Numbered from the stretch's first letter, positions 4,881 through 62,986 are shown. The stretch: DNA of 64,000 bases from Mytilus edulis (GCF_963676685.1 NC_092353.1:50158001-50222000), one strand, 5' to 3'. A program made the numbers and translations. The notes: generated from the sequence alone by a model not told the origin.

Positions 4881-5052
4881 GACGACTAGCGATTATTGAT
4901 GACAATAGCTCACATGGTCCTTCGGCTAACGGGTTAAATATTCGAATAAGCTACAATGCCAGAAAATGCAGTATATGTTTATCCTTTTGATTTATTACCA
5001 AAACAATATACGTAAAAATCAGATCCATCTTATTTTGATTAACTATTTACTA

Positions 5053-5422
5053 AAGTTGTGCGCACAAGATTAAAAGTTGTGTGCATAAGATTAAAAGTTG
5101 TGCGCACAAGATTTAAAGTCGTGCACACCAATTTGAAAAAGTTGTGTGCACAAGTTTACAAAAGTTGTTGTGCGCACAAGATTAAAAGTTGTGCGCACAA
5201 GATTTTAAGTTGTGCGCACAAGTTTAAAAGTTGTGCGCACATGATTAAAAAAGTTTTGCGCACAAGTTTAAAAAAGTTGCGCGCACAAGTTCAAAAAAGT
5301 TGTGCGCACAAGTTCTAAAAAGTTGTGCGCACAAGTTTTAAAAAGTTGTGCGCACAAGATTAAAAAAGTTGTGCGCACAAGATTAAAAGTTGTGCGCACA
5401 AGATTTAAAGTCGCGCGCACAA
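5053..5422. repeat. Minisatellite of ~21-23-nt units built on the palindrome TTGTGCGCACAA
   Basis: About 16-17 units of aaaagttgtgcgcacaagatt. Confidence 0.9.
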
Positions 5423-7546: not shown

Positions 7547-10450
7547 TCACAATCTTTCGTAACCGGCATCACGTTTTCTGCATTTCAAAAAGTAAACAAT
7601 CATTAGTATAACAACTGATACCCCGATTCCCAAAACTATTCCTCCTACAAAACTTGCACCATTAAATCTATACTTCTTCGTAGTGGTCGGCATTGCATGT
7701 GTTGTTGGATGTGGATTCGTTTTTGGAGTTGACATTGGTGTAGACATATTACTTGGGAGAGTTGATGGTTCTACTGTAACATTTGGGTTTGTAGTTGTTG
7801 GTTCTACTGTAACATTTGGGTTTGTAGTTGTTGGTTCTACAGTTATATTTGGGTGTGTGGTTGTTGGTTCTTTTGTAACATTGGGGTGTTTCGTTGTTGG
7901 TTTTACTGTAACATTTGGGTTTGCGGTTGTTGGTTCTACTGTTACATTTTGGTTTGTGGTTGTTGGTTCTACTGTAACATTGGGGTTTTTCGTTGTTGGT
8001 TCTACTGTAACATTTGGGTTTACGGTTGTTGGTTCTACTGTAACGTTTGGTTTTGTGGTTGTTGGTTCTACAGTTACATTTTGGTGTGTGGTTGTTGGTT
8101 CTACAGTAACATTTGGGTTTGTGGTTGTTGGTTCTATTGTAGCATTGGTGTTTTTAGTTGTTGGTTCTACTGTAACATTTGGTTGTTTGGTTATTGGTTC
8201 TACTGTTATATTTGGGTTTCTTGTTGTTGGTTCTACTGTAACATTGGGGTTTGTGGTTGTTGGTTCCATTGTAGCATTGGGATTTTTCGTTGTTGGTTCT
8301 ACTGTAACATTTGGGTTTGTGGTTGTTGGTTCTACTGTAACATTTGGGTTTGTGGTTGTTGGTTCTACTGTAACATTTCGGTTTGTGGTTGTTGGTTCTA
8401 CTGTCACATTGACGTTTTTAGTTGTTGTTTCTACTGTAACATTTGGTTGTATGGTTGTTGGTTCTACTGTAATATTTGGGTTTCTTGTTGTTGGTTCTAC
8501 TGTAACATTGGGGTTTGTGGTTGTTGGTTCTACTGTACCATTTTGGTTTTTCGTTGTTGGTTCTAGTGTCACGTTTGAGGCCTTAGTTACAGGTTCCATT
8601 GTAACATTTGCAGTTGGAGTTGTTGGCTCTACAGTAATGTTAGTATTTTTCGTGGTCGTAATATTTGGAGTTACCGTTGTTTGAATGGTAACATTGGAGA
8701 GTTTGGTTGTCTGACCAGTAATGTTTGAGTCTCTTGTAGTCGTTGCAGAACTAGCTGATGTTTTTTGGTCGGTTGTTGTCTGACTGACATTTGTTGCTAC
8801 AATGCCATTGACATGCTTTGTTGCTGAAAGGTAAAAACATAACTTTAAAGAATTGAAATCTCAACTGATTGATTAACAGAAAATCTTTTTAAAACATTTT
8901 AAAAAGTCTTATACATATTTGCTGTGTCTTTTTATCCCTTCTTTAAAACAGGTAGTGTATTACTATATTTTTTCTAGTCTATGCATAATATAAAAAAATA
9001 TCTATTTTTGTATTTGTATTTAAACTAGTATCAAAACTTTCACTTAATATTTCTACATATTTGTTATTTTTCTCACCTATACACATTCAATTTTGTTTTT
9101 ATCTATTATATATATTTTATGATAAATCAACGACTTCCCATTTTCTCCGGAGAGGAGTAGGTCCAATAAAAAACCCTTTTGGCCCCAAAACATAGCAGTT
9201 TAACAAAATTGGTAAACTGTAAGATTTTAGTTATTTATTGAAAAATAGAATGCTTTTGCTACATAAAAAAATGGCTGTTTTTGACAATACAATGCAAAAA
9301 ATATCGGGTATTTGCATCATTAAGTTATGCTAAATTACTGAAATCTCCCCTTTTTAGCATTTTAGTTAAATTTTAGACGGGTGCCGTCTTCAATGAAAGC
9401 GGCTGCATTTGTGTTCATTCTTAGTTTTGAAATGAAAGTTGTATTTGATGATAATACATAACATATATAAAGGTTGAGGATGAACACGGATGCGGCAACT
9501 TCGTTTTTGACAAAAACCATCTGAAAAGTGACATTTTTTTGGCATATTTGATAAGTTTTTCAAATTTAAGCTTGAATCGGAGCGTTTTTAATGAGTAGAT
9601 TAGTTTAAATCTATCACATAAACTAATTGAATCAACTGAAATAGACACTAAAGTGTTTAAAAAGTGTCCAAAATCTTTCGTCAGATGAACCTGACATTTG
9701 AGGCCAAAATCGGCCTTTACCGGACCTACTCCTTTTAGTTTTTTCATAAACCTGTATTTTAAAAACAAGGACACTAATTTCCCCATAATTTTATTTATCC
9801 ATGCTCTATCAAAACATAATTCTATTTATGAATATTGTGCGATTTCAAATTTTACTGATGAAAATCACATGAAATTTTCTTTAATAAAAAAACCCAGAAT
9901 TAATTAAAATTCAAATCGATTAATCAACTGCATTTTAAGAGAATTGGTACGTTATTAATTTGTTTGGGGTCTAATAAAAAGTATATTCCCATAGTATTCG
10001 TGTTACAAATGTAGAAATACACCGTTTTAACCGCATACAAAACATGCTGTATCCAATTCATATATTATAGAAATTAAACGAATAGCAGTATTTCATGTTA
10101 ACAATTCAATTCAATTCAAATCTGTATTGCCATAAAACTACATATTTATAGTATGTGATACAACATAACAAAATGAAAATAAAAAATAACAACAAGATCA
10201 TTAATATACACAATATTAAAAGTAACAAAGAGTTTAAAATTGATATTGTGAGTTTACAACGATAACCCGTTTAAATAAAAAAAAAATTATCAAACGAACT
10301 TTTACTCAAGAAAAATAAAAAAATAGTGAGTTGCACAATGACTTGAAATTTGAATCTGTTCAAAACTGACCTACCAATTCTAGGTTTAGAGTTTACTGCT
10401 GCAAAGCAGACAACCACTAGCAATATGGTGCTCCTATATGTAACATCCAT
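7547..10450 (-). CDS. CD164/porimin (TMEM123)-like type I membrane sialomucin, long copy, 450 aa, 2 exons
   Basis: Exon 1 10375-10450 (MDVTYRSTILLVVVCFAAVNSKPRI, signal peptide; phase-1 GTAGGT donor). Exon 2 7547-8823 (tttcag acceptor, in frame). Thr/Pro-rich ectodomain, then FNGASFVGGIVLG (CD164/porimin juxtamembrane-TM signature), TM helix and a short tail ending YERL (YxxPhi sorting motif). Confidence 0.88.
7751..8641 (-). repeat. Coding tandem repeat, 27 x 33 nt (NVTVEPTTTNP)
   Basis: Counted from the translation; each unit starts with an N-x-T sequon. Confidence 0.92.
9153..9733. mobile_element. MITE in the intron of the long CD164-like gene
   Basis: TIR AGGAGTAGGTCC/GGACCTACTCCT; absent at the paralogous site (~14850); partial copy ending ~12556. 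Confidence 0.8.
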
Positions 10451-13999: not shown

Positions 14000-15899
14000 T
14001 CACATTCTATCGTAACCGGCATCACTTTTTCTGCATTTTAAAAAGTAAACAATCATTATTATAACAACTGATACACCGACGCCTAAAACTATTCCTCCTA
14101 CAAAACTTGCACCATTAAATTTATACTTCTTTGTAGTGGTCGGCATTGCATGTGTTGTTGGATGTGGATTCGTTTTTGGAGTTGACATTGGTGTAGACAT
14201 ATTACTTGGGCGAGTTGAAGGTTCTACTGTCACATTGGGGTTTTTCGTTGTTGGTTCTACTGTAATATTTGGGTTTTTAGTTGTTGGTTCTACTGTAACA
14301 TTTGGGGTTGTGGTTGTTGGTTCTACTGTAACATTCGGGTTTTTCGTTGTTGGTTCCAGTGTCACGTTTGATGCCTTAGTTACGGGTTCCATTGTAATAT
14401 TTGAATTTTGAGTTGTTGGCTCAACAGTAATGTTAGAATTTTTCGTTGTCGATTCTTTCGTGATATTTGGAGTTATCGTTGTTTTAATGGTAACATTGGA
14501 GAGTTCGGTTGTCTGGCCAGTAATGCTCGAGTTTCTTGTAGTCGTTGCAGAACTAGCTGATGTGTTTTTGACGGTTGTTGTCTGACGAACAGTTGCTGCT
14601 TTAATGCCATTGACATTCTTTAGCACTGAAAGAAACAAAATATACTGAAGATAATTGTAATCTCAACTAAGACAAAACACGTACGTCTCAAGCATGGCCG
14701 CTGTGTCTTTTCACCCCTTCTTTAATACAGATATTTTATTACTAAAAGTACTCTTTTTGTTTTTTCTAATATAATTTTCTGACCTATACACACTCATTTA
14801 TTAATCTATTTGTTTTAAGATAAAACAACGACTTCCTTTTTCCTCCGGAATTTTCAGTTTTAGTTTTTTAAACTTGTATTCTAAAAACATGGACACGTAA
14901 TTTTATTATCCATGCTCTATCAAAACATAATTCTATTTATGAATATGCGATTTTAAATTTTACTGATAAAAATCACACGAAATTATCTTTTTAAAAAGAA
15001 CCAGAATTAATTAAATTTCAAATCGATTGATCAACTGAATTTTAAGAGAATCGGTACGTTATTAATTTGTTTGAGGTCTATATTCATTCCCATGGTATTC
15101 GTGTTAGAAATACACCGTTTTAACCCATTCCCATGCTATTCGTGTTTGAAATACACCGATTTAACCCATTCCCATGGTATTCGTGTTAGAAATACACCGT
15201 TTTAACCCATTCCCATGCTATTCGTGTTAGAAAGACACCGATTTAACCCATTCCCATGGTATTCGTGTTAGAAATACACCGTTTTAACCCATTCCCATGT
15301 TATTCGTGTTAGAAATACACCGTTTTAACCCATTCCCATGGTATTCGTGCAGAAATACACCGTTTTATTCCATTCCCATGGTATTCGTGATAGAAATACA
15401 CCGTTTTAACGGCATATAAACCATGCTGTAACCAATTTATATATTATAGAAATTAAACGAATAGCAGTAATGCATTTTAAAATTCCATTCAATTCAAATC
15501 TTTATTGCTATACGATTTATCAACTGAATTTTAAGTGAATTGGTATGTTATTTATTTGTTTAAGATCAATATTCAAATAGTATTCTTGTTGGAAATACAC
15601 CCTTTTAACCGCATACAAAATATGTTGTATCCAAGTTTACATACAGAAATTAAACGAATAGCAGTATATACTAGTATTATTTTAACAGTTTGAAATTGAT
15701 ATGGTAAATTTAAAACGAAACCTTTAAATAAGGAAGTAATCAAATAAAATTATAGTCAGGAAGAATAAAAATAGCGTTTTGCACAATCATATGAATTTTT
15801 TAAAATGTTCAAATATTACCTACCAATTCCAGGTTTAGAATTTACTGCTGCAAAGAATATAACCACTAGCAATATGGTGCTCCTATATGTAACGTCCAT
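14000..15899 (-). CDS. CD164/porimin (TMEM123)-like sialomucin, short copy, 233 aa, 2 exons
   Basis: Exon 1 15824-15899 (MDVTYRSTILLVVIFFAAVNSKPGI, GTAGGT donor). Exon 2 14000-14625 (tttcag acceptor, phase 1). Same FNGASFVGGIVLG-TM, tail ends YDRM. Clear paralog of 7547-10450. Confidence 0.88.
15085..15410. repeat. Intronic minisatellite, ~8 x 41 nt
   Basis: Unit cattcccatggtattcgtgttagaaatacaccgttttaacc. Confidence 0.9.
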
Positions 15900-33717: not shown

Positions 33718-34915
33718 TAAGGCTCTAAATTTCTATTTCAGCACCACACCAATTCAGTTTAAGGATATCCTGAAATATGTTAGGACCTTCATTATTTAAT
33801 TTCAGGAGGTTCTTAAATATATTAGGATTTTATTAATATTTAAGGAGCTCCACAATCATAATTATATACTTCAAGACCTCTATTAATTTATTTCAAGATA
33901 TCCCTAAATGTCAATGGAGGTTCGCAAATGTTGCAGGAACTCCACAATTGATTTATTGTAAATTATATCCTCAAATGCGTTGTGCAGGTTCACAAACATT
34001 TCAGTATGCTCAATGATTCATATTTATCTCCCAAATTATAATTCGTGAGGTGCTGAAATATTCATTGAGCTCCTTGAATACAAAATCTTTGACTCAGTAA
34101 TCTAAGTCTCGTGAGCTGCCGCGGATTGAGTACTCCTCTCTACCTCTTCCTCAGTGAAACGTTGATAACAATGTGACAATAAACATTTTTTTAACCCTTA
34201 CGTGAGAAACTAAGAGAAACATTGTGTATAAAAAACATATAAAGGGAGACATACTATGGTTTGATCATATTGATCGCAAACGTGGATCATTCCATCCAAG
34301 ATAATGTTACTAGAAATGTTAAATTCTCACTTTAAAAATTGAAACATAATTTGTATGGCTCAATGTTACCTCTTTGTAAGAAAATCTATCAGTACTGCTA
34401 TCGATCGAAATCATAATTTCTAATTTTTATCAGAACTGTTTTTCCCAAGAACATCTTGCGTTCCTGAAAATACTTGTTGGTTATTGACCAGACGATATTT
34501 TCCTGTTTCTTATGATATCATTATATAATTAAATATGAACTTGATGATGCTCTGTTACAAAAAACTGCTTGTGTAATTGGTTACCATAAAAAGACCTTAA
34601 AATTGTTTACAGGAAAAAACAAAATGGCACGGTTTCAGATTACATCTGTATTGGTAACTAATTTAAAACACAAGTCAAACTTACTGGAATGGATCAATGC
34701 ATATTCTTCTAATATTGTTTAGACAACAAATAAACACTTTTGGTCAACTTTTTATCTGCGATTTTGTGCGTCATTATAGTCATGTTCGTTTTAGTGTAGA
34801 TTATATTTTTTATTTGTTGGATCACACTGAATTCTATCCCTTTGTGGAGATTTTACTAGGATTTAGTCTCTTCCACATACTAGTAAGTTTTAAAATATTG
34901 AAAAGTGAGAAAAAA

Positions 34916-35494
34916 ATGTCGAATCACAAAGTACTAGACAATATAATGGACACCGTTTTAGAACGGAGAGGATCAAAATCTGTAGCAAAATCAGACTGGA
35001 AAAAGTCTACTGGTAAAAACTCGAGAGCAAGAGGGACAGGAAGCAAACTGAGTATCCATGCACAGACAAGAGAAAGGTCAATGTCGTCTGACCTAGATAG
35101 TATGGACATGCTGAGGTCAATCAAGCGTGGAGTTAAGTACGAAAATACTTTCCGTCTAGAACCAAAGGACGACGAACTATTTTCATGTTCTAAGATGGAA
35201 AAAGCAATGCAAGAGATTATGGAAGAAGTAATCGGCGACGCACCTTACGACTCCGTCACGTGCAATACTCTAGTTCATACCGTATCCAATCAGATCAAAG
35301 ATAGAGCAAAAATATTCCCATGGAAACGGTATAGGTTCATAGTTCATGTTATCCTAGGACAGAACACGAATACATCAATAAAGGTTGGCAGCAGATGTAT
35401 ATGGGATGAACATCGGGACACTTTTGCTACTGCCTCATATGAGAACAAAACAATATTTGCCATGGCAACATGCTTTGCAGTGTATTTGGATTGA
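34916..35494 (+). CDS. Tctex1 domain-containing dynein light chain (DYNLT/TCTEX1D-like) A, 192 aa, intronless CDS
   Basis: YENTFRLEP...RYRFIVHVILGQ...VGSRCIWDEHRDTFATASYENKTIFAMATCFAVYLD. The probable ATG is 34916; the upstream part of the ORF track is low-complexity and UTR-like. Confidence 0.9.
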   Translation: MSNHKVLDNIMDTVLERRGSKSVAKSDWKKSTGKNSRARGTGSKLSIHAQTRERSMSSDLDSMDMLRSIKRGVKYENTFRLEPKDDELFSCSKMEKAMQEIMEEVIGDAPYDSVTCNTLVHTVSNQIKDRAKIFPWKRYRFIVHVILGQNTNTSIKVGSRCIWDEHRDTFATASYENKTIFAMATCFAVYLD

Positions 35495-40034: not shown

Positions 40035-41342
40035 ACTGGTTCAATGGTCCAATCGTATGACAGAAACAGCATGATGTTGCAGTTTCGACAGTGGTAGATT
40101 AAAGGCCGTGTACTAGTGGTTGTCGCAACACATCCATTTTTCTTTAAGCTACTTTAATAACGTAAAATATTAATAAAATGATGATCGATAAAAAAGGATA
40201 AACTCTCTAAGCTCCTAGATCCCTTCTGTCAAAATTTGAAGTTATTAGATTCACCCCTGTTGAACACCTATTAAATACGTCAGTGTCGATTTCATCAAAC
40301 TGATCTGGCTACATCACGTGACAGTATTGAAGAAGTATGATATTATTTATAAAAGAGAGACGAAGATACCAGAGGGACATTCAAAAGCAAAAGTCGAGAA
40401 AACAAACTGACAACGCAATTGTTTAAAAAAGAAACAGACAAACAGAAGTACATAAAACACAACATACAAAATTAAATACTAAGCAACACGAATCCCGCCA
40501 AAACGGGAGGTGATCTCAGCTAGGCGTTCTGGAAGGGTAGACAGATCCTGCTCCATATGGGGCACCATCCGGTGTTGCTCATGTCAGTACAAACCTGGAA
40601 ATAAGTCTAAATGCATCAGTGCATAGAAAACTGGAAGAAAAGAGAGAAGACCTTGGTGTCCTTTTTTGTGCAATGCCCGGATAAGAGACCTTAGTCTGCA
40701 ATAAGTTCAAAGTATTTGTTTCAGGCATGCATGCAGCTTCAAGCGAACCATTACACACTATAAACGGAAATGTGCATTATTGAACCATTTAATCAACAAA
40801 ACCCACATATTTATGAAACTTTAATACAAATGTAGTTGAATGACGTATTGCAATGAAAAAAAAGCAGAAAAAGTCGTGTTTATTAATTACTAGCCAATTC
40901 AGAAAATAACAATTGTCATTGTACACACACGAAAAAAAATCTATATTCTTATAATTATCTCTTTACCTGAGTAGAAAATGAGATTTAACAGTAAGAAACA
41001 ATCTCAATCTGTAAAATAAGATAATGTATACATTTCAACTAAGTCAATATAATTAAGGCTGTCATTCATAAATACTTCATAAAACCCATTTGTATCGTCA
41101 AATAGAAGGCTGTGATCACGAATTGAGGATCAGAATCGATGATTGTGCGCCAGCTTTTCCATAGGATATTTATCGGGTAGAATTCTCAGTAATCCACAGA
41201 TATTTATAACGTAGGTACGGTGAATGGATGGATTTAATCAATGTTTGACACGCTTTTAGATAAAATTATCTAATTGCGAAGTTCATTCTGGTTTCCGTTA
41301 TAAAGTGAATATTGACTAAGTATTTGTTTATTGCGGAAAAGC

Positions 41343-41897
41343 ATGACGATGGATTCTAGGAGGATACGGAGAACACACGGACATGGCGGTGGTCATATAC
41401 CTGGGCATGGACAGAACCTGACTGTGCCGGGCAGGCTTACAAAAGCCCATGGGCATACTTTAAGGGATCACAAAGGAAACGATAGTAAATCTGAAAGCTC
41501 TGATCATGACAGAGGGAAATATTTTCATGAACATGTCAGACTTGAAAATACATTCCAACTGAATCCATGTGAGGATTATAAGTTTTCTAGCAAACAGATG
41601 GAAAGAGCAATGAAAGAAATATTAGACAAACAGTTAACCGAGACGGACTATAACGGGAAAATATGCCCGACAGTTGCCGCAAACTTGTCATCCTTAATAA
41701 AAGAACGAGCTAAGGAGTTTCCATGGAAACGGTACAGATATGTTGTACAAGTTGTAGTTGGAGAGAATTCTGAGCAAGCAGTACAGATAGGTAGCCGCTG
41801 TATATGGGATGAAAAGAACGATAATTTTGCATGTGTTACTTTTAAAAATAAAACTGTGTTTGCCGTAGCTGCATGTTATGGGATTTATTTAGAATGA
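41343..41897 (+). CDS. Tctex1 domain-containing dynein light chain B, 184 aa, intronless CDS
   Basis: LENTFQLNP...FPWKRYRYVVQVVVGE...GSRCIWDEKNDNFA...FAVAACYGIYLE; first ATG at 41343. Confidence 0.92.
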   Translation: MTMDSRRIRRTHGHGGGHIPGHGQNLTVPGRLTKAHGHTLRDHKGNDSKSESSDHDRGKYFHEHVRLENTFQLNPCEDYKFSSKQMERAMKEILDKQLTETDYNGKICPTVAANLSSLIKERAKEFPWKRYRYVVQVVVGENSEQAVQIGSRCIWDEKNDNFACVTFKNKTVFAVAACYGIYLE

Positions 41898-46096: not shown

Positions 46097-47009
46097 TAAA
46101 TAACATTTTTTGTTGGTTTTGGTCAATCCAAGGTAAAATGCCACTTATTATGACATTGGTCTACACATTCCCAATTTTGTTTTTCATTTCAATATTACTT
46201 TTTTTTTTACAATGCTTGAATGACAATAAGGCACATTCCAGTCCATAAGGTAAATACGTTTGCTTCATAAATATAAACACTGTTGAGATTGCTCGTTTAA
46301 TTTTAGACTGTTTCAAGTAGTCAGCCGAGAACCAGCTTACATGCACGCTTCGTCGGTAACGTCAGGATTTGTGTTCGCAGCAACTTTATAGTGCAGTAAA
46401 AAGTACATCAACCATGCAGTTAGTTAAATTAGGTACAGACATTTGACTTTATTAAAAGCAATTAAAAATCGATTTTAATAATTCCAAAAGTTAAATCAAT
46501 TTCACGAACAAGAAGAACTTTCGCTTCAAAATAAATGGCACAAAATATAATTAATAAAAATGTAAATAATTTCAATAAGCACTGAAAATAATGATTCCAT
46601 TATAACTAAGGATAATTGCAACTTGGCAGTGATAACAAAACATAATATGCATTTTATTGAAAATTAATCGAGACTTTGGATCTTCTCACTATTAATAATA
46701 CAGTTGAATTGAATGCAGACATTAGTCAATGATACATCCGCCATTATAATTTAGGTATGTATAGCATTGAACAAGATTTAATTAACTATAAGCAATTGTG
46801 TTCATTCATCTGTCATGTATTGGTTGTCAAGCAAGTTCAATTAAACAATAGAAAAATCTAAATCATTTTAGAAAGTCTTTAATTCGATTCACTGGTTCCA
46901 TTAATTCAAAACTTGCAAATTCATTTTTGACTTTATATAACATTCTGTAATATTTATTCTTGTTGAGAGACATTGTAAATAGAAATTTGTGGATTTTACA
47001 ACAAAAGCA

Positions 47010-47510
47010 ATGGATAAAGCATATCTACAGAGACCAACAGCTAGAGCAGCTCAGCTTCGTGCTGCCACCAAAAGTCAAACACCGTCAGGACGTCGAGACG
47101 ATGAAAGCAACTGTCGATCTGAAACTACAGACGAACTTAATAAATTCAAATGGGAAAATACATACAAAATGGATCCTGACAATTTACTCTCGGAAAATAC
47201 AATTCAAGGCACAATGAGACAGGCAATTAAAGAACTCATTGCCGGTGAAGACGACGATTTTCTCGAGTCAGAGGGCAGGGGTCATTTGTGTGCGAAACTA
47301 ACAGACGACATCAAGCATCGAATAAAAACGGAATATGCTAATACTAGGTACAGATTTATAATTCATGTAACTATTGTTCAAGATTTTGCCACTTTTTCCA
47401 TCGGAAGTAGATGTTTATGGAACGATAACACAGACAATCACATGACAGTTTCCATACCTTTTGGTGATAGTTATATTGTATCAACTTGTTATGCTGTTTA
47501 TTTTGAATAA
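47010..47510 (+). CDS. Tctex1 domain-containing dynein light chain C, 166 aa, intronless CDS
   Basis: WENTYKMDP...RYRFIIHVTIVQ...GSRCLWNDNTDNH...CYAVYFE; first ATG at 47010. Confidence 0.9.
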   Translation: MDKAYLQRPTARAAQLRAATKSQTPSGRRDDESNCRSETTDELNKFKWENTYKMDPDNLLSENTIQGTMRQAIKELIAGEDDDFLESEGRGHLCAKLTDDIKHRIKTEYANTRYRFIIHVTIVQDFATFSIGSRCLWNDNTDNHMTVSIPFGDSYIVSTCYAVYFE

Positions 47511-48913: not shown

Positions 48914-49760
48914 CACTTATATGTTTTTACTCTTTATGCGAGTTTGGTATTGACGGTAGACACTTTTATGTTTTTACTTTTTATGCGAGTTTGGTATTGA
49001 CGGTAGACACTTATATGTTTTTACTCTTAATGTGAGTTTGGTATTGACGGGAGACACTTTCATGTTTTTACTCCTTATGTGAGTTTGGTATTGACGGTAG
49101 ACACTTTTATGTTTTTACTCTTTATGCGAGTTTGTTATTGACGGTAGACACTTATATGTTTTTACTCTTAATGTGAGTTTGATATTGACGGAAGACACTC
49201 TTATGCTTTTACTCCTTATGTGAGTTTGGTATTGACGGTAGACACTTTTATGTTTTTACTCCTTATGTGAGTTTGGTATTGACGGTAAACACTTATATGT
49301 TTTTACTCTTAATGTGAGTTTGGTATTGACGGTAGACACTTTTATGTTTTTACTCTTTATGCGAGTCTGTTATTGACGGTAGACACTTATATGTTTTTAC
49401 TCTTAATGTGAGTTTGGTATTGACGGAAGACACTTTTATGCTTTTTCTCCTTATGTGAGTTTGGTATTGACGGTAGACACTTTTATGTTTTTTACTCCTT
49501 ATGTGAGTTTGGTATTGACGGTAAACACTTATATGTTTTTACTCTTAATGTGAGTTTGGTATTGACGGAAGACACTTTTATGTTTTTACTCCTTATGGGA
49601 GTTTGGTATTGACGGTAGACACTTTTATGTGTTCACTCTTAATGCGAGTTTGGTATTGACGGTAGACACTTATATGTTTTTACTGGTTATGTGAGTTTGG
49701 TATTGACGGTAGACACTTTTATGTTTTTACTCTTTATGTGAGTTTGGTATTGACGATAGA
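48914..49760. repeat. Minisatellite, 18 x 47 nt
   Basis: Unit cacttttatgtttttactctttatgcgagtttggtattgacggtaga. Confidence 0.93.
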
Positions 49761-52763: not shown

Positions 52764-53252
52764 ATGGAAACGCGTCTCCCAAGACTTAGTAGATTTTCTA
52801 ATTTAGTGAGAAACGTTATCAAGTCTCCTCACATCTTTAAGCGAGAAGATGACAGCAGCCGAACTGAAACGAGCGAAGAACCTAAAATTCGTTATGAGAA
52901 TACATATAGGATAGCACCAGATGACACTATCGCAACCAAAATTGTCAACAGTATCATGAACAATACAATACTGGAGGTGGTTTCCGGAGAGGAGGAAGAT
53001 TTCTTGGATAAAGAGGGGCGTGGTTTTCTCTGCACGCGACTGAGTGATGCTATCAGACAACGAATCAAAGCGGAGTATTTTAACAGTCGTTTTAGAATAA
53101 TTGTACACGTAACTATTGTTCAAGAAAACGCTACAATTTCTGTTGGAAGTAGATGTCTATGGAATGATTCTACAGATACACATACATCTGTGACTGTACC
53201 ATTCGAGGATAGTGTGATCGTGGCAACTTGCTACATGTTATACTATGAATAA
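52764..53252 (+). CDS. Tctex1 domain-containing dynein light chain D, 162 aa, intronless CDS
   Basis: YENTYRIAP...RFRIIVHVTIVQ...GSRCLWNDSTDTH...CYMLYYE; closest paralog of C. Confidence 0.9.
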   Translation: METRLPRLSRFSNLVRNVIKSPHIFKREDDSSRTETSEEPKIRYENTYRIAPDDTIATKIVNSIMNNTILEVVSGEEEDFLDKEGRGFLCTRLSDAIRQRIKAEYFNSRFRIIVHVTIVQENATISVGSRCLWNDSTDTHTSVTVPFEDSVIVATCYMLYYE

Positions 53253-54943: not shown

Positions 54944-56878
54944 TTAATTGTGCGGGCCATCTTTGACACTGATATTCCATAATTTTCAACCCAATCATGC
55001 TGGCATCTGTTTAACTTTTGAAGAGCTGACCTCGACTTTACCATCATGAACCAAATTGGTTCAAAGGTGACAACAACAACCTCCCTTGAAGGCAATCATG
55101 ATAAGATACATACAATTTACAATATTGTATGAACTGCGGTTGATTTTACTCCATTAGAAGATATTGTTTGATTTATTTATTTTTTTGGATAGAAATGGTG
55201 AGTTCACGAAAGGAAATATAAATTTTTCTTTTGTTGTAAATTTTACTTGCATTACGAGGAGATGGCCTTACATGTTGTATGTAGCTCTAACGAGTCTTAG
55301 TACCTACAATGTATATCTAATCCCCACCTTCCTGAGAGTGAAGAAGTTTCACATTAATTTAGAGGAGGGGTTTTCATTGCTGGTATTAAATATAGAAACT
55401 TTCATTTAATGTTTTCGTGGCGCATATGACAGACAAATCAATATAATAAAACATAATTTGTTATGACACGCCGCGATATGGATAAGAAATATAATATTAT
55501 TGACTGATTGTTTGTTGCTTGACGTCCATTGGCAAATATTTCAGGGAAGATCCATAAGTTGGGAATATGATTTAAAACGGACCAAATATTATTTAGTGTG
55601 TATCGATAGACGTGGAGTATACGTTTCAAGTTTCCTTGTGAATTTTTATTATTATATTAACGAACAGGAGAGACCAATATTTGTTCTATGACACCCACAC
55701 GAAGCGTTAATATAAATCAAAGTATGTATACCAACTTTATAAATTATACAACATCATAAAAATTTAAACAGTAGGACAGAGTTATTCTATATTTACTTAC
55801 ACTCCATTCACTTTTAATACTTGAACTTTTTTTAAAAAGGGAAGTGAAATCGAGTCAAGGGTGTAATATCAGTTTTAGTGATCAATGATTTCTTTTAAAG
55901 TGTAATTTTCTTATGTGAAATTGGGCAATAATCATAAATCCATATACTAGTGTATGAAGTTTACGATCGTACCCACAACTGTCACTTCTTCAAGGTTATT
56001 TTTTTAAGATTTGGGGTCAATTGTTGAATACCTATAAGACGCCAGTAAAAAATTACACTTCTTGAAATAGTCAGTAAACAAATAGTGATTGTGACATTTT
56101 TCTTCAGAAAAAAAAATGTTTATAAATATAAGCAACCCGGCGAAAATAGTTCTTCGCTGTAGACTAACTTACATGGGGAGCAGAAAGAAGACAAACGGGC
56201 TTTCAAACTCACAAGTCGAAGTAGTCCGCGTTTGTTCTGACGTCTAACAACTGTTTTGCCAGACAAGGCAGCTAGGCAGTGACTCAAGTCAAAAATAAAT
56301 TAAACTTACAACGCAAATGAAAGAGAACAGTTAAAAAGTAAAAACAACAGTATACTACACACGTTCTCCCTTTCTTTCCCAGATCCCTGTTTCTATTTAC
56401 TCTAATAACCGACATCCAACTTTTTATATATATCCCGCATCCCAAAATATTCATAAACACTCATACTTGCAATAAATATATAAAAAAAAAACTGTATTTT
56501 TGTATACAATAACTTTATCTTAATTCACGTTAACCCTCAAAAAGTCAAGTAAATATCACAATTACAGCACATAATAATTTATACAAAAACATATCATTTA
56601 CAACAAATGCTTCATGTTTTCAAGACTACTCATATAAAAGTATTTATTATTTAACTGTATTAATTTGCAATCTTTCACTCCTAAAGTCAACTTATTCCAT
56701 ATGTATGCAAAAGAAAAACATAAAAGTTTTCTAAAGTTTTTTTTCTCACTTTTTTTGTGTTATCTTTGGCTTTGGCAGGCTAAACAATTTCTCAACTGTT
56801 TGAAATTTGTTCTTTAAAATGCAAAACCTCAATGAGCTCTCTGACTACTATGTACAATATTTGAGGCTGGTACTTGTA

Positions 56879-59800
56879 CTATTGAATACTACAACCCCTA
56901 CGCCGGGATTTTATAGTTTTTTCCTTAGAGTCCTTTTTAATTAATTGCTCAATTCCATCGACACATGTATTATTTAAGTCTTCATTCTGACACTGATGTT
57001 TTTGTTCAAGGTGCGCATATGCTTTTACTGAATTTACTGTAGCGGTAATTGGTGCAACACGTGCTACTTGTAGTCTAGATTCATCTGAACTCCATTGAGA
57101 ATCGCAGCTTTCATCAGTTAATTCAACAGGGAAACGGATTGTCGGTATATTTGGCATAGAACCTACAATAAAATGATAACTTTAAGATCTTTTAACCCAC
57201 ATGCAATATTATTTTTAATGTTATCAATATTTCTTCACGGTTATAGCTAATACATTATCTTATCGAAAACATTCTCATTTTAAGAGATGATTCAAAGGGG
57301 GAAGAGGTCGCAATGTTTTTCAGCATAAAATCTTCAAAACAAATTTAAACTCGCTACGCTTCTCGTTTTTTTTCTTCGTCCCGATTTAATGGAATTACGC
57401 CCCCTTATGAAAAATCCTACATCCATCCCTAAATGTAAGAGCACATAAGCACACTGGTCCCCTGTTGTATTCAGTTATTGCTACGCTTCGGTGCGGAGTT
57501 TAGTTGGAACGGGGGACCAGCTTACTCCGTAGTATATCTGAGGTAGTTAAAGCAGACCCACGTTTGCCTACTTTGTCATGTGTCAATATATATACTCACG
57601 TGATATCTCGTCTGCTATAAATTCCTGATTTGTATGGGTAAGGGCATTACAGAGGGCCTTAATTCCATAGTGTTTTGTTGTGAGAACATTGATTAAACGT
57701 AATAGTCTTTCCTCCTTATTCCTAGGTTCTCTGATAAACATCTCAGTCACGTGCGTTAACACGTGCTGAGATATCAGGTATGGTATCAAGTCATTTACTT
57801 GGTAAATATTGTTCAAGATGAAAGGAATCTTCTCATGGAGTATTCGCACTTCTGTCTTTGACATTGGCTTTCCTAAATAGATATCAAACAGTCGTGTATA
57901 TTATTTAATTTCTGAAAAAGTTGTTAAGCTTTTAAATTGTATTATCAAACGTGTTTGAAATTGCCATACTCATCTCTAACTTTGTAGATAGATATATAGG
58001 AAGATGTGGTGTGAGTGCCAATGAGACAACTCTCATAGTCATTCAAATAACAATTTAAAGAATGTAAACCGTTATAGGTCCATGTACGGCCTTCAACACG
58101 GAGCCTTGGCTCACACCGAACAACAAGCTATAAAGGGCCCCAAAATTACTAGTGTAAAAGCATTCAAACGGGAAAACCAACGGTCTAATCTATATAAAAA
58201 ACGAGAAACGAGAAACACGTATAAACTACATAAACAAACGCAACCACTGTACATCAGATTCCTATAGCAAACAAGTCCAAACAAAGCCGGCATGACAAGA
58301 CACCACTGCGAAATATTTAAACCTTCGAAAATATTCACTTTAGAAAAAAACCGATTTTAATAATACAGGTAAATCTTGAAGTTTATACAAATTTAGTAAG
58401 AAGAAGTGAAAATTTATATAAAATAACAAAAAAGCATTATAAACAGTATCAACAGGTCAAATTAACAAAAAAAATACGATTTGAGAGTACTCGCAGTTAC
58501 TGACAGCTAGTTAAAAGCCAAACACATGTACAATCAATAATAAAAAATCATGCATCATGCAGACTAAGTAGAGTTTACTATATCTATATATATATGCGTT
58601 CTTGCGCAGCTTCAATAATTCATATAAGTATTAAAGTTACCTCCGATATCAACACCAATGTCTTCTAATGCATTCAGTAACGTCACAAAGCTTTCGTCTG
58701 AGCTTTCATTTGACTGCCAAAACTTTATCGTCTGCCAAAACATTTCAACATAACCGTACTCCCTGCATTCTTCTACCTTTTCTATCTGGTGATTTGATAA
58801 ATGCAGTAATCGTCCCAGTCGACAAATATTTGGACCTGGGTGACAAAGTTTATTTAGATAACTTATTACAGTTTTTTTTTGTTGTTTTTAAATCAATGGA
58901 TTTGAAATTGGATATTTGATGATTTAAAGACAAATTAAAGAACTCTTTTCGAAAATTTTATGTGATTTCTTTACAAATGTTTACCAAATTTGAAAGATTT
59001 CAATCAGTCATGTTCAGAAGTAAACTAGATTAATGCAACTTTTTCTTTCGATTTTCAGGCAGTTCAATGAGCAAAGGATGTGTGCAACTTTTTTCCAAAA
59101 TCTGAAACATAGCCCATATATTGTTCCTTGTCCTTAACATCATCACTACGACATCTCAAATAAAACCTCTAAACTAAAGTTACTAGGCATTTTCAAGTTA
59201 TCTTCCAATGGATTTTTCCATCTATTTCAGTTCTTACCAGGCCAAACATTCATTTACAAAATCATCCTGCCTCTCCCCTCTGAGGCTCACGCTAAAAAAA
59301 TCAAATCGGCGTCCCTTAGGCCTTAAACGGTTTACAAATTTGTATACATACCAATCATTTCCTCATATTTTTGACAAAAACATTTCAATTCAGTCGGCAT
59401 TCTGTAGAATGTAGTATTCGTATCCACGTTGTCTACATTCTTATGACTCAGATTTGATATTTCAATCAAAACCTGATTTATCTGTTTTTGAATTTCTTGA
59501 AATGGAGTTTGCTGTGAATTTCTCTCAACCATTGGACTGACAGAAACCTAGAAGTAAAACACACCAATACATTAAACGTGTGCCTTCTTTTTGTATATGC
59601 AATTGAAGTAAAGCAAACAAAGCTATGACATAACATAACAAAATACAAAAGAGAAGACTTCGTCTCAGAAATGTTTTCCTATATACCTCAAAAATTACAT
59701 TAGATGTATGTTTCATTATAATATTTTATTCTGATTGGCTAACTGCACATCACGTGTTATTCCGTAAGCAGTTGCATTGCTCAATACAACTTTTCACTCA

Positions 59801-61426
59801 TGATAACACGTGCTCCAACAATAAAGTGCACAGGTGAATTAAATAATAAAATTCGTGTTTTCACGATCATAGCTAAAAAATGTAATTATAAGTATTGAAT
59901 GCTTCTTTTTGTAACTTTATAGGGTTGTAAAAGCGTTGACCGTGCGTACATTTTTAGTACTTCGGTCAACGTTTTGACACCCCAATAAATTTACAAAAAG
60001 AAGCATGCAATTCTTAATATAATGGTTTATCATGAAATTTAAGAATTTATTTCTGTGACCTGTGTTGGGAACTTACCACTGGCTGCTTCAGCATAACGTT
60101 TTCTCTGCTGAGTGTCTGTATATGGTTCTCCATTTCTCTGATTCTTTTCTCCAACTGGTATCGTATTGTTTGTTCATGGTGATAGTTGTTAAATGCTCTA
60201 TCTCCATCTACAATCGCAATGTGTTTAGCTATTTTCTTGTCTCTTTGAGTTTGCGTCAGTTGAGCCTGGAGTCTGAGAATCTGGTTTTGAAATTCTTGTT
60301 CATTTTCTAAAGTAGCTGTTCGTTCCACTTCCCTGATATATACCTGTGCATCGTCTTTCCTATTCCTTGATTGGTTTTTTTCTGTTAAAATTTTGAACAA
60401 AATACACGATTGATTGTTGGTTACTATAGTACTTAACGTTCAGTGGCAAATATTTCATGCCGGAATAAAATATACGAAGAATTTAAACTAATACACCATA
60501 TCGCTTTTTACTCCAATCCGAATAAGATCTGAAATTACACAACTTTTACACCCATTTGACATCTATCTGGGGCCCAGTTTAAACAATGTATTACGCATAA
60601 ACCTTTTTATTTATAAAAAAATATTTTTAAACAATCATAAAAAGCTTCAAAAAACTGTTATGATTTTAATATATATATATATTGTTTGCTTTCTATACAA
60701 TTTCTTTCCTTAACTTGAAACAGTTGACGTTTGTTGTTGCAATGTTTGAACCAAACAGGAATTTGTCTTAATTACGATAAATAGCGATAAGGTGTATTCT
60801 ATATACCCATTCAAAAATAAAAGCGTTTTTTAACAAGACATAGACATAAACAAAAGTAATCCAAATCCATTCCAAGCAACATCGTCGCATATATTGATGA
60901 AAAATCAATAAAAAGCATACACAAAACTATGAAAAGACAAAAATCTAAAAACCTTTCGGAATTGAAACAGCCTTTTTAAAAGAGAAGGTACAAGTCTAAA
61001 ACAGAACTTACCTTCTGCATAATACCCATCAACCATTCGTTTCAGCTTTTGTAACACTTTGACAAAGTTTGTACGTCCTTTTATCTTTGGCAATTCATTT
61101 AATAATGGTGGCATTCTTCTTAGTTTTCTGTTGTCTATTATAATAATGTGTCTTTCTAGACAAATTGCCAAAGCAACATCATAAACACATTCAGTCGAGT
61201 CTATAAAGCTATCGGACAAAAGTACCACCACTAAGTCTGACTTTAGAACCGCATTTCTTTTGTTGTCTAGTATCATACATCCGGGTATAAAATCTCTGTC
61301 TCCGTATATAATTCCAATATTAGAATCTTCCAAGCGTTCGATGATTCGTTTCGATTTATTTCTTTCGTCTTCATCTCCACCGTCAGACAAATAAATGGTA
61401 AAGTTACCGCTTACGTCCATTACCAT
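56879..61426 (-). CDS. Multi-domain adaptor-like protein: TIR - coiled coil - Death domain - CARD - polybasic CaaX, 555 aa, 6 coding exons
   Basis: Exons 61012-61426 (TIR: DRDFIPG, VVVLLSDSFIDSTEC), 60077-60381 (coiled coil), 59352-59547, 58641-58835 (Death domain: IGPNICRLGRLLHLSNHQIEKV...MFWQTIKFW...TLLNALEDIG), 57600-57872 (CARD: LIPYLISQHVLT...RLLRLINVL...LCNAL...QEFIADEI), 56879-57162 (ends KSRRRGCSIQ*). All introns GT-AG, phases 1,0,1,1,1; 1668 nt, open. Possible polyA signal at 56643-56648. Confidence 0.8.
57995..58265 (+). repeat. High-copy interspersed repeat (aagatgtggt...gccaatgagacaactc family)
   Basis: Copies at ~5845-5990, 24025-24260, 44160-44300; fragments at 3935-4030, 6430-6545, 62280-62560. 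Confidence 0.75.
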
Positions 61427-62986
61427 TTAATGTCATTTAATCTAAAAGGAAATGGGAACATATCTTTTAAATTAATGTACATGTATAAGCAAAGCGCAAT
61501 TGTTCTTCGACCCTTAGCGATATACTGACTAGTCTTGGTGGTTTACTAAACTGTCAACTCTATGGTTGGAAGTTCTATCTTGAATGAAAAGCATTGGCAA
61601 TTTGCCGCCCCTTTTTACCATCAGGTACTCTGGCTTCCTCAAATTATAAAGTCCGTAAATATATATATGACATAACGCTTAAACACAAACAAACAAACAT
61701 TTTGTTCACATACATTATACGGTTATTTACAAGATGCAATTTTGAACGTTAATATAAGAGTTACAAAAGTTAAGTAGGATTGTAGTTTATCTAAGTTTTG
61801 TGTGAAATTGTGGCTTAAACCTGTACGAATCTAGATTTTCCTTTCGAAGTGATATTTATTGTGAACCGTTTCGAACTTCTAAGCTCCGATCGAATATTAA
61901 CAGCTTTCAGACTGTGTTTTATTATGTATCAAGACTACACAATCTTAAATTGAAAAAAAAGTTGTTCTGTGATTTTCATGCTTACCCTATGACGATAACC
62001 TTTTAAGCAGCATCTCATTAAATTAATGGCTCTCCAACCTCCATGTAAACAGGAAGTTTTTGTATGTATTTATGTTTACATGACACTGGGAAACCCTGAT
62101 TTTTATATATCTATAAAAAGTATTTATTAAAATGTCTAAATTGATTCGGATGTAGGTCAATGTATAAGTAAAGGTTCTTGTAATCACTTCCTTAAGGCTT
62201 TTATATCTTCTTCTGTATACATCTTTTGTCCACAAGTTAAAAAACAGGACATCTTTGAATATATAATGGTGTTGAATTTTCTGTGTTGATTGTTTTGACA
62301 CAGGAAGTTTATTGGCCTGTTACCCAGTGGTTGTCGTTTTATGCTGTGTTGCATATTTGTTTTTCCTTCATTTATTTTGTACATAAATCATTTACTTTTC
62401 TCGTTTGAATTGTTTTATAATTGGCATTTCGAACTGTTTATAGCTGACTATGCGGTATGGGATTTCGGTGAACTATGGTTGTTAATATCTGTGTCATTTG
62501 GTTACTTGTGAAGAGTTGTATCTTTGAGAATCACACCACCATGACCTCATCTTTTTTCTGTATATTAACAGACTGAGTGTGATAATATAGGTGAAGGGAA
62601 AGACCAGCATCTGTTTTAGTTTATAGTTTTGATACACTGAGCCAAGCAGGGTCTAAGGGATCAATCCATGATAGTAATATGAAAGATTCTAATCTTCAAT
62701 CGATATATCAGAAGTCATCATATTGCTTTTTAAAGCTACACTCTACATGTTCTTTTAAAAAATACCAGAGGGACATCCAAAACTGATAGATAAAAAATAA
62801 ACTGACAATACTGACGAACATACAAATTATAGTACACAAGACTCAATATAGAAAACTATAGACTAAGCAACACGAAACCACCAAAAAATGGGGATGATCT
62901 CAGGTGCTCCGGAAGGGTAGGCAGAATGCCGATCCTGCTCCACATATAAACTTTTAATTATTCATACATGTAAGTTTTATACTTAC

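What the first reader, a model, noticed from the sequence alone, without database searches (positions are those of the whole stretch)
56879..61426. Hidden six-exon gene encoding a TIR - coiled coil - Death domain - CARD adaptor
Seen: five short minus-strand ORFs from the track, plus an exon the track misses (58641-58835), join through canonical GT-AG sites with matching phases into one open 555-aa frame. The exon 3/4 junction rebuilds a recognisable Death domain (ELKCFCQKYEEMI|GPNICRLGRLLHLSNHQIEKV...MFWQTIKFW...LLNALEDIG). Known: MyD88 is DD-TIR, RAIDD/CRADD is CARD-DD and FADD is DED-DD. I know of no characterised protein with N-terminal TIR, then coiled coil, DD and CARD. Inference: a single-chain bridge able to link Toll-like receptor TIRs to both DD partners (IRAK/RIPK/FADD-like) and CARD caspases, in effect a fused myddosome/PIDDosome adaptor.
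Basis: partly seen in the sequence, partly recalled or inferred. Interest (0 to 1): 0.88.

Follow-up and report, generated by a model that had tools for sequence, protein, structure and literature searches.

The report
Mussel TIR-Death-CARD adaptor gene
This is a real, transcribed six-exon blue-mussel gene whose protein joins a Toll-receptor docking domain, a dimerising coiled coil, a Death domain, a CARD and a likely lipid anchor; databases already list it as "uncharacterized protein" and nobody has tested what it does.

Summary
Six minus-strand exons (61426-61012, 60381-60077, 59547-59352, 58835-58641, 57872-57600, 57162-56879) join through GT-AG introns into a 555-codon frame. Spliced contigs from three small, RNA-like public runs carry all five junctions, and one 2037-nt contig spans all six exons.

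The gene is not hidden in public data.

- **Domains:** TIR and Death pass Pfam's cut-offs. CARD is just below its cut-off but aligns to a genuine mussel CARD.
- **Coiled coil:** it models as a parallel homodimer.
- **C-terminus:** a polybasic stretch ending in GCSIQ, a CaaX-type motif, is invariant in five Mytilus species.
- **CARD exon:** it is a phase 1-1 cassette that an annotated isoform of the twin copy skips.

Full-length relatives were found only in Mytilus. Three single-exon fragments about 50% identical come from unnamed species.

A near-identical inverted twin lies 374 kb away. This scan had already examined that twin (s1-834638). Its claim that oysters have the gene was not reproduced here.

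The function, a membrane-tethered TIR-to-death-fold adaptor, is inferred and untested. This is a new variant of a known kind, of moderate interest.

The parts
61427..61442 (-). 5' untranslated start of the first coding exon. An acceptor AG lies just upstream. At least one further 5'UTR exon lies outside 56300-62250.
   Evidence: Contigs align up to 61442 and carry 70-84 further unlaid 5' letters. The sequence reads ttttag|attaaatgacattaa before the ATG, with an in-frame TAA at 61429-61427.
61012..61426 (-). Exon 1: start codon and the whole TIR domain (residues 1-138). It has an RDFIPG BB-loop. Asp83 sits where NADase TIRs have the catalytic Glu.
   Evidence: Pfam TIR 1.2e-7, 32.2 bits, above the 21.3 cut-off. 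The AF2 TIR region has pLDDT about 80, and Foldseek's best hits are MyD88, Hydra TRR-2 and MAL TIRs with TMt 0.70-0.77. HMMER alignment to the TLR2 and TLR15 TIRs.
60077..60381 (-). Exon 2: coiled-coil region (residues about 139-240).
   Evidence: Only coiled-coil-type weak Pfam hits. Long helices in the model. A two-copy model gives a parallel in-register dimer over residues 162-237 with ipSAE 0.50 against a best control of 0.11.
59352..59547 (-). Exon 3: linker plus the first helix of the Death domain.
   Evidence: Translation. In the full-length orthologue the Pfam Death match starts at residue 302, in this exon.
58641..58835 (-). Exon 4: core of the Death domain.
   Evidence: Pfam Death 3.3e-5, 24.4 bits, above the 22.6 cut-off. 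A 54%-identical exon-sized fragment, P0088, from an unnamed species ends at the same ...VDIGG border.
57600..57872 (-). Exon 5: CARD-like domain. It is a 273-nt phase 1-1 cassette, so skipping it keeps the frame.
   Evidence: Pfam CARD 4.9e-4, 20.5 bits, below the 23.9 cut-off. 26% identity, E 6e-13, to a mussel CARD ORF that scores 28.2 bits. Atlas structure neighbours are CARD and caspase-2 clusters. Eight synonymous and no non-synonymous differences from the twin copy. RefSeq isoform X2 of the twin (P0075, 463 aa) lacks exactly this exon.
56879..57162 (-). Exon 6: a tail predicted to be disordered, then a polybasic stretch, the GCSIQ C-terminus (CaaX-type; Cys codon 56891-56893) and the TAG stop (56879-56881).
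   Evidence: Translation. GCSIQ and the basic residues are invariant or conserved in M. edulis, trossulus, californianus, coruscus and galloprovincialis, while the rest of the tail is 79-88% identical.
56593..56878 (-). 3' untranslated region, at least 286 nt, with an AATAAA near 56641-56646.
   Evidence: The X3 contig runs to 56593. Sequence.
57892..58289 (.). High-copy repeat, very abundant in the RNA-like runs, inside intron 4. It is part of an insertion of about 600 nt (57989-58594) that the twin copy lacks.
   Evidence: Summed depth reaches about 1e4-1e5 with many loose ends. The twin has 119 nt at this place.
59683..60080 (.). Second high-copy repeat inside intron 2.
   Evidence: Summed depth about 1300-5900 against 25-170 for the exons.

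Best explanation
This is a genuine, spliced, protein-coding gene of Mytilus edulis. Its 555-aa product is most likely a membrane-tethered signalling adaptor of innate immunity and cell death.

Shown here: the exon structure, the transcripts, the domain order, conservation across Mytilus, and the annotated CARD-less isoform.

Inferred working model:
1. The C-terminal polybasic stretch plus CSIQ is farnesylated and holds the protein at the inner face of a membrane, much as lipid or PIP2 anchors hold TRAM and TIRAP.
2. The coiled coil makes it a parallel dimer.
3. The N-terminal, TLR-like, probably non-catalytic TIR docks onto activated TIR receptors. Mussels have very many TLRs.
4. Clustering then nucleates death-fold assemblies through a CRADD-like pair of domains in reversed order. 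The Death domain would recruit DD partners such as IRAK-, FADD- or PIDD-like proteins, and the CARD would recruit CARD caspases or other CARD proteins.
5. Skipping the CARD cassette would give a DD-only variant that changes or damps the output.
For: - **Gene and transcripts:**
- **Domains:** Pfam TIR and Death are above their cut-offs, and CARD has E 4.9e-4.
- **TIR fold:** it is closest to the MyD88, Hydra TRR-2 and MAL TIRs. By sequence it is closest to the TLR2, TLR15 and TLR6 TIRs. Its nearest paralogues in the genome are TIRs at 33-36% identity that sit in long open frames of about 850-900 aa. The one I checked, 897 aa, is a TLR with LRRs and a TIR.
- **BB loop:** the box-2 motif RDFIPG is present.
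- **DD-CARD half:** its nearest Atlas clusters are CRADD families (0.84-0.86), and a CARD-only cluster matches with TM 0.82.
- **CARD:** the exon aligns to a genuine mussel CARD.
- **Coiled coil:** homodimer score 0.50 against a best control of 0.11. The runs agree in at least 98% of contacts and the pLDDT is at least 84. The tool's own mark was reached by 21 of 30 true homodimers and 0 of 23 single chains.
- **Selection:** TIR, DD and CARD are 91-98% identical between Mytilus species, against 79-86% for the coiled coil, linker and tail. The CARD exon shows 8 synonymous and 0 non-synonymous differences between the two genomic copies.
- **C-terminus:** GCSIQ is invariant. From general knowledge, CaaX boxes with an aliphatic a2 residue and X = Q, S, M or A are farnesyltransferase substrates; examples are PRL-1 (CCIQ) and lamin A (CSIM).
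- **Context:** molluscs lack APAF-1, and CRADD has been considered their only CARD-containing caspase activator (PMC11463336). A second DD+CARD protein is therefore a plausible caspase recruiter.
Against: - There are no functional data of any kind.
- CARD is below Pfam's gathering score. Its exon has no PDB sequence hit.
- The DD and CARD regions of my AF2 models are of low confidence: pLDDT mostly below 50 for the DD and about 37-72 for the CARD. The single-sequence fold of the CARD exon failed.
- The BB-loop proline is Leu in the M. coruscus clade.
- Raw RNA-seq run X21, with about 6% of the run read, had no exon reads, so expression may be low or conditional.
- Runs X1-X3 are only guessed to be RNA.
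- Prenylation and all partners are inferred.
- The family is narrow: only Mytilus has full-length members.
Confidence: 0.6

Rival explanations
1. It is a negative regulator or decoy. By carrying TIR, DD and CARD without any enzymatic output domain, it would sequester receptors, MyD88/IRAK-like proteins and CARD caspases at the membrane and damp signalling. TIR-only MyD88 variants, SARM in some settings and CARD-only proteins work this way.
For: There is no effector domain. Oysters are reported to have TIR-only MyD88-like competitors (PMC4346834; PMC7381170 title). A CARD-less isoform exists. Expression appears low, with no reads in X21.
Against: Nothing distinguishes this reading from a positive adaptor at the sequence level. 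Dimerisation plus three homotypic-assembly domains is the layout of nucleating adaptors such as MyD88, CRADD and ASC.
Confidence: 0.2
2. It is a TIR enzyme effector. The TIR would be an NAD+-cleaving domain, as in SARM1 or the bacterial and oyster TIR-STING type. The DD and CARD would be the input modules that cluster it, so that death-fold filament formation triggers NAD+ depletion or signal-nucleotide production.
For: The TIR fold also resembles the TIR of TIR-STING, the SPARTA TIRs and nucleoside 2-deoxyribosyltransferases. Weak Pfam hit to Nuc_deoxyri_tr3, E 0.044. Oligomerising domains flank the TIR.
Against: The position of the catalytic Glu (SARM1 E642, aligned with the E in the TLR2 'YEL' motif) is Asp83. 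It is Asp in all orthologues and in the two distant fragments. The closest sequence matches are scaffold TIRs of TLRs and MyD88, and the BB loop is the canonical RDFIPG.
Confidence: 0.12
3. It is a young, lineage-restricted chimeric gene with no selected function: transcribed noise or an annotation artefact of exon shuffling.
For: Full-length members occur only in the genus Mytilus. The symmetric phase 1-1 exons are typical of shuffled modules. The gene sits in a large duplicated, repeat-rich block.
Against: The frame is intact in five species, including M. californianus and M. coruscus. Domains are more conserved than linkers, and the CARD exon shows 8 synonymous and 0 non-synonymous differences. 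The same splicing appears in runs of three studies. TIR- and DD-exon fragments about 50% identical, with the same exon ends, in unnamed species imply an older origin.
Confidence: 0.05

Closest known systems
MyD88 (DD - intermediate domain - TIR)
   Same: It combines a scaffold-type TIR with a Death domain in one chain. The TIR model superposes best on MyD88 TIR structures, TMt 0.70-0.73. The nearest Atlas cluster for the whole protein is MyD88, at 0.75, which is a lead only.
   Different: The domain order is reversed, with the TIR N-terminal. There is a 100-residue dimeric coiled coil instead of the intermediate domain, plus an extra CARD and a CaaX tail. TIR identity to MyD88 is only about 19% in the structural alignments. 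It is not an orthologue.
CRADD/RAIDD (CARD - DD), the PIDDosome adaptor for caspase-2
   Same: The C-terminal half has the same two death-fold domains. Its nearest Atlas clusters by features are CRADD families, 0.84-0.86. Molluscs keep CRADD as their supposed sole CARD activator (PMC11463336).
   Different: The order is DD then CARD, not CARD then DD. The protein is 555 aa against about 200 aa. It has a TIR, a coiled coil and a lipid-anchor motif. There is no significant direct sequence match to CRADD: the best PDB death-domain hits are FADD at E 0.16-0.9, which is not significant.
TIRAP/Mal and TRAM (membrane-tethered 'sorting' TIR adaptors)
   Same: It has a TIR plus a membrane-targeting element. 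The TIR model also matches the MAL and TRAM TIRs.
   Different: The tether would be a C-terminal farnesyl group plus a basic patch, rather than an N-terminal PIP2-binding motif or a myristate. TIRAP and TRAM have no death-fold domains.
Invertebrate 'direct-connection' TIR hybrids: amphioxus TIR combinations (PMC2575513), placozoan TIR-CARD 'MyD88-like' proteins (PMC6321704) and the bivalve TIR-DC families of Gerdol et al. 2017
   Same: It follows the same evolutionary theme, in which domain shuffling puts a TIR next to death-fold or other signalling domains in animals with expanded innate immunity.
   Different: I found no description of TIR - coiled coil - DD - CARD with a CaaX end. The Gerdol 2017 catalogue is not held in the library, so I could not check whether this family is listed there.

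Membership tests
TIR domain (Pfam PF01582/PF13676) | Profile score above the gathering threshold | tested here: met
   Exon 1 scores 32.2 bits against 21.3. TIR_2 scores 27.6 bits against 28 for the exon, and 28.6 bits in the orthologue P0001.
TIR domain (Pfam PF01582/PF13676) | Flavodoxin-like TIR fold | tested here: met
   AF2 pLDDT is about 80 over residues 10-140. Foldseek probability is 1.00 to the MyD88, TRR-2, MAL and TLR TIRs, with TMt up to 0.77.
NADase-type TIR (SARM1, plant and bacterial TIR enzymes) | Catalytic glutamate in the alpha-C region (SARM1 E642 equivalent) | tested here: not met
   The aligned position is Asp83, invariant in all 12 aligned sequences. Activity itself was not tested.
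Death domain (Pfam PF00531) | Profile score above the gathering threshold | tested here: met
   Exon 4 alone scores 24.4 bits, and full-length P0001 scores 25.6 bits, against a cut-off of 22.6.
Death domain (Pfam PF00531) | Six-helix death fold | tested here: inconclusive
   The model is helical over 292-364, but pLDDT is mostly below 50. The Atlas model aligns residues 291-465 to a CRADD-named cluster with TM 0.54 by query.
CARD (Pfam PF00619) | Profile score above the gathering threshold | tested here: not met
   20.5 bits (exon) and 18.6 bits (P0001) against a cut-off of 23.9, although the E-value is 4.9e-4.
CARD (Pfam PF00619) | Homology to accepted CARDs and a death fold | tested here: inconclusive
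   BLASTP E 6e-13, 26% identity over 86 aa, to mussel ORF L015:166-558, which scores 28.2 bits for CARD. A CARD-only Atlas cluster matches with TM 0.82 by row. My own single-sequence fold failed and there was no PDB sequence hit.
MyD88 family | N-terminal DD, intermediate domain, C-terminal TIR | tested here: not met
   The order is TIR ... DD-CARD.
CRADD/RAIDD family | Two-domain protein of about 200 aa with N-terminal CARD and C-terminal DD | tested here: not met
   The order is DD then CARD, inside a 555-aa TIR protein. There is no significant sequence hit to CRADD.
CaaX-prenylated proteins | Cys at position -4, aliphatic a2, X that fits farnesyltransferase, at the true C-terminus | tested here: met
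   The protein ends ...GCSIQ followed by the stop, preceded by K/R-rich residues. The motif is invariant in five species.
CaaX-prenylated proteins | Actual farnesylation and membrane binding | not testable with these tools
   This needs metabolic labelling, a mobility shift, or localisation of wild type against a Cys-to-Ser mutant.
Dimeric coiled coil | Heptad-register self-association | tested here: met
   Two copies of residues 121-240 score 0.50, with controls at or below 0.11. Contacts follow an a/d pattern over 162-237 in a parallel, in-register arrangement. This is a model only, not a measurement.

The most novel reading that the evidence does not exclude
Mussels possess a farnesyl-anchored, dimeric 'all-in-one' adaptor that couples TIR receptors directly to CARD-caspase activation, a TLR-to-caspase shortcut that bypasses the separate MyD88 and CRADD/PIDD hubs. 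Inclusion of the CARD cassette by alternative splicing would decide between a death or inflammatory-caspase output and a DD-only output. In animals that lack APAF-1, it would be a second CARD-caspase activator beside CRADD.
Probability: 0.25. Interest if true: 0.7.

Novelty: new variant of a known kind. Interest (0 to 1): 0.5.

Why it matters
Bivalves have very large TLR and TIR-adaptor repertoires whose wiring is almost unknown. They also lack APAF-1, so how their CARD caspases are switched on is an open question (PMC11463336). A conserved, expressed protein that physically joins a TLR-type TIR to a CRADD-like DD/CARD pair and a membrane anchor gives a concrete, testable candidate link between pathogen sensing and caspase activation in mussels. 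It is also a clean example of exon-shuffled innate-immune architecture, with the CARD carried on a single symmetric phase 1-1 cassette exon. This matters to comparative immunology and to research on mussel disease and aquaculture. It does not change any general principle.

Tried and rejected
- **Joined translation:** I searched exon by exon by reference and used database proteins (P0001, P0074) returned by the tools.
- **The look-up of encoding contigs:** The contigs and species of the distant fragments P0002, P0003 and P0088 could not be examined.
- **Relatives outside Mytilus:** I ran an exhaustive HMMER search with the TIR exon, word-based searches with the whole protein, with the DD-CARD region and with the alignment profile, and a Pfam scan of ten weaker hits, most with an N-terminal TIR. 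None showed the DD/CARD architecture outside Mytilus. The earlier agent's statement that oysters have the gene (s1-834638) was not reproduced, and it was not disproved either.
- **Structure of the DD and CARD:** the full-length AF2 model had a shallow alignment and low confidence outside the TIR. The single-sequence fold of the CARD exon failed with pLDDT 44. phmmer of the CARD exon against the PDB found nothing.
- **Identity of the nearest CARD paralogues on contig C8:** ORFs downstream of them gave no Pfam hit, so I dropped this line.
- **Raw-read RNA run X21:** it gave no exon reads at about 6% sampling and covered only the intronic repeats. This is uninformative on expression level.
- **Rfam and tandem-repeat scans of the locus:** nothing found.
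- **Gerdol et al. 2017, the catalogue of bivalve TIR-DC families:** not held in the library.
- **CARD-skipping joint (57162 to 58641):** it was not among the joints listed, and 41 joints were not shown. The isoform therefore rests on RefSeq model P0075 of the twin copy and on M. galloprovincialis model P0072.
Full report
**1. The observation**

- E1 runs 61426-61012. Its ATG has A at -3 and G at +4, and an in-frame TAA lies immediately upstream.
- E2 is 60381-60077, E3 is 59547-59352, E4 is 58835-58641 and E5 is 57872-57600.
- E6 is 57162-56879 and ends in TAG.

All five introns are GT..AG. The phases are 1,0,1,1,1. The exon lengths add to 1668 nt, which is 555 codons plus the stop. Each exon's internal codons translate without a stop.

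Searches used single exons by reference or database proteins returned by the tools.

**2. Transcription and splicing**

Fourteen small assemblies (42-189 million letters) hold 33-41% of the sampled words of the 5.1-kb stretch. That share is about the exonic fraction. They are labelled "RNA? (a guess)".

I laid X1, X2 and X3 on 56300-62250. These come from three studies and two species labels.
- The joints skip 630, 529, 516, 768 and 437 nt, exactly the five introns, with CT..AC ends on the + strand.
- One X3 contig of 2037 nt crosses all six exons, from 61442 to 56593. A 1212-nt X1 contig crosses E1 to E4.
- Depth is 25-170 in exons and close to zero in non-repeat intron bins.
- The contigs carry 70-84 further 5' letters that do not lie in the stretch, so at least one 5'UTR exon lies further upstream.
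- A raw-read RNA run (X21, about 6% read) showed no exon reads. It covered only two very abundant intronic repeats (57892-58289 and 59683-60080).

**3. What genome, and is it "hidden"?**

The window is G000:C10:50158001-50222000, on a contig of 84,842,022 bases. That length matches the record that encodes the Mytilus edulis RefSeq proteins found by the searches.

P0074 (XP_071135180.1/XP_071135181.1, "uncharacterized protein [Mytilus edulis]", 555 aa) contains the six exon translations at residues 1, 140, 241, 307, 372 and 463.

Orthologues of 550-554 aa are annotated in four other species:
- M. trossulus (XP_063403437.1);
- M. californianus;
- M. coruscus;
- M. galloprovincialis, where the models are truncated.

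All are named "uncharacterized", or automatically "TIR/Death domain-containing protein".

**4. Domains**

- **Pfam, exon by exon.** E1 is TIR (1.2e-7, 32.2 bits, above the cut-off). E4 is Death (3.3e-5, 24.4 bits against 22.6). E5 is CARD (4.9e-4, 20.5 bits, below 23.9). E2 gives only coiled-coil-type noise, and E3 and E6 give nothing. The full-length orthologue gives the same picture.
- **TIR fold.** The AF2 model is confident only for the TIR, with pLDDT about 80. That part matches the MyD88, Hydra TRR-2 and MAL TIR structures with TMt 0.70-0.77.
- **TIR sequence.** It is nearest to the TLR15/TLR2 and TLR6 TIRs. Its nearest paralogues in the same genome are TIRs at 33-36% identity that sit in long open frames of about 850-900 aa. 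The one I checked is an 897-aa LRR-TIR protein. It has the box-2 motif RDFIPG. At the position of the catalytic Glu of NADase TIRs it has an invariant Asp.
- **CARD.** The assignment is supported by a pairwise E of 6e-13 to a mussel CARD ORF that passes Pfam and by CARD and caspase-2 structural neighbours of the Atlas model.
- **DD-CARD half.** Taken together, this half is nearest to CRADD clusters, with scores of 0.84-0.86, which are leads only.
- **Coiled coil.** Two copies of residues 121-240 model as a parallel, in-register coiled coil. The score is 0.50 against a best control of 0.11. The runs agree in at least 98% of contacts and the pLDDT is at least 84. The tool's mark was reached by 21 of 30 true homodimers and 0 of 23 single chains.

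**5. The tail**

The last exon is predicted to be disordered. It ends in a basic stretch followed by GCSIQ and the stop.

That ending is invariant in all five Mytilus species, although the rest of the tail is the least conserved part of the protein. From general knowledge it has the form of a farnesyltransferase CaaX box.

The window copy has one more Arg than the twin copy (KSRRRG against KSRRG), and all three RNA-like runs lack the same three letters at 56901.

**6. Selection and exon logic**

Between Mytilus species, TIR, DD and CARD are 91-98% identical. The coiled coil, linker and tail are 79-88% identical.

Between the two genomic copies, the CARD exon has eight nucleotide differences, all synonymous.

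The CARD exon is 273 nt long and is flanked by phase-1 introns, so skipping it keeps the frame. RefSeq isoform X2 of the twin copy (463 aa) and an M. galloprovincialis model lack exactly this exon.

**7. Range**

An exhaustive HMMER pass with the TIR exon over 1.84 billion cluster representatives gave only three hits below 1e-10. One is the Mytilus protein. The other two are TIR-exon-sized fragments, 51-52% identical, from unnamed Logan and ENA contigs.

A DD-exon fragment 54% identical, also from ENA, ends at the same exon border. Relatives therefore probably exist outside Mytilus.

An earlier agent working on the twin copy wrote that oysters have the gene (s1-834638). My searches did not reproduce that.

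**8. The twin**

The same contig holds a second copy at C10:50593041-50597609, on the + strand. It is inverted and lies 374 kb away.
- Identity is 97.8-99.8% across the gene and upstream flank. Further 3' of the gene the blocks are mostly 96-99% identical, lower in a satellite stretch. The matching block runs from window position 40488 to at least 7.5 kb past the window's end.
- The copies differ by insertions in introns 3 and 4, by seven amino-acid replacements and by one codon deletion.
- The RNA-like contigs are mosaics of variants of both copies.

The two "copies" could therefore be a recent inverted duplication, or two haplotypes placed apart by the assembler.

**9. Interpretation**

The best reading is a membrane-tethered, dimeric adaptor. 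It would dock through a scaffold-type TIR onto TIR receptors and nucleate death-fold assemblies through a CRADD-like DD/CARD pair, with CARD inclusion regulated by splicing.

Only the architecture, the expression and the conservation are shown. Anchoring, partners and output are inferred.

The rivals are a decoy or negative regulator, an enzymatic TIR effector (disfavoured by Asp in place of the catalytic Glu), and a functionless young chimera (disfavoured by conservation).

**10. Novelty**

TIR joined to death-fold domains is a known invertebrate theme (PMC2575513; PMC6321704; PMC4346834). In the papers I could search, I found no description of TIR - coiled coil - DD - CARD with a CaaX end. 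The key catalogue, Gerdol et al. 2017, is not held.

Molluscs lack APAF-1, and CRADD has been considered their only CARD-bearing activator (PMC11463336). This gives the protein some relevance.

I rate it a new variant of a known kind, already annotated but uncharacterised, and of moderate interest.

Noticed in passing
window 40488-64000 and beyond, against G000:C10:50583000-50612999: A large inverted duplicate of this region, at least 31 kb, lies about 374 kb away on the same contig. Identity is mostly 96-99.8%, lower in a satellite stretch. It includes a full second copy of the gene (C10:50593041-50597609, product XP_071135203.1, 554 aa). RNA-like contigs mix variants of both copies, so it may be a true inverted segmental duplication or an uncollapsed haplotype.
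   Followed up: partly
window 57892-58289 and 59683-60080: Two intronic repeats have very high summed depth in the RNA-like runs and in raw RNA-seq: up to about 1e5 in the contig runs, against 25-170 for the exons. They show many loose ends, as high-copy transcribed transposable elements would. The first is part of an insertion of about 600 nt that the twin copy lacks. Neither was classified.
   Followed up: no
window 34697-35494, 41331-41897, 46989-47510, 52764-53252 (+ strand): Four tandem single-ORF genes each carry a Tctex-1 (dynein light chain) domain, with Pfam E-values from 3e-13 to 1.5e-25. This is a local expansion next to the adaptor gene, and it is partly inside the duplicated block.
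   Followed up: no
window 7547-8599 and 14000-14638 (- strand): Two ORFs have MGC-24/CD164 sialomucin-like C-terminal domains (Pfam E about 1e-10). A long ORF overlaps the first on the opposite strand, which suggests low-complexity, mucin-type sequence.
   Followed up: no
window 48924-49713: Staggered self-matches at offsets of about 47 nt indicate a satellite-like tandem array. Its copy number differs between the window and the inverted twin.
   Followed up: no
G000:C8:40904700-40905450 and 40931300-40932050 (L015, L014): Two neighbouring genes about 27 kb apart carry CARD exons (Pfam 28.2 and 26.7 bits). They are the closest CARD relatives of exon 5 in this genome. Their other domains were not found in 10 kb downstream.
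   Followed up: partly
P0069/P0082-P0084 (M. coruscus clade), alignment A2 column for residue 48: The BB-loop proline of the TIR (RDFIPG) is Leu in the M. coruscus-type orthologues. That clade also has a second Cys just upstream of the CaaX box, a possible palmitoylation site.
   Followed up: no
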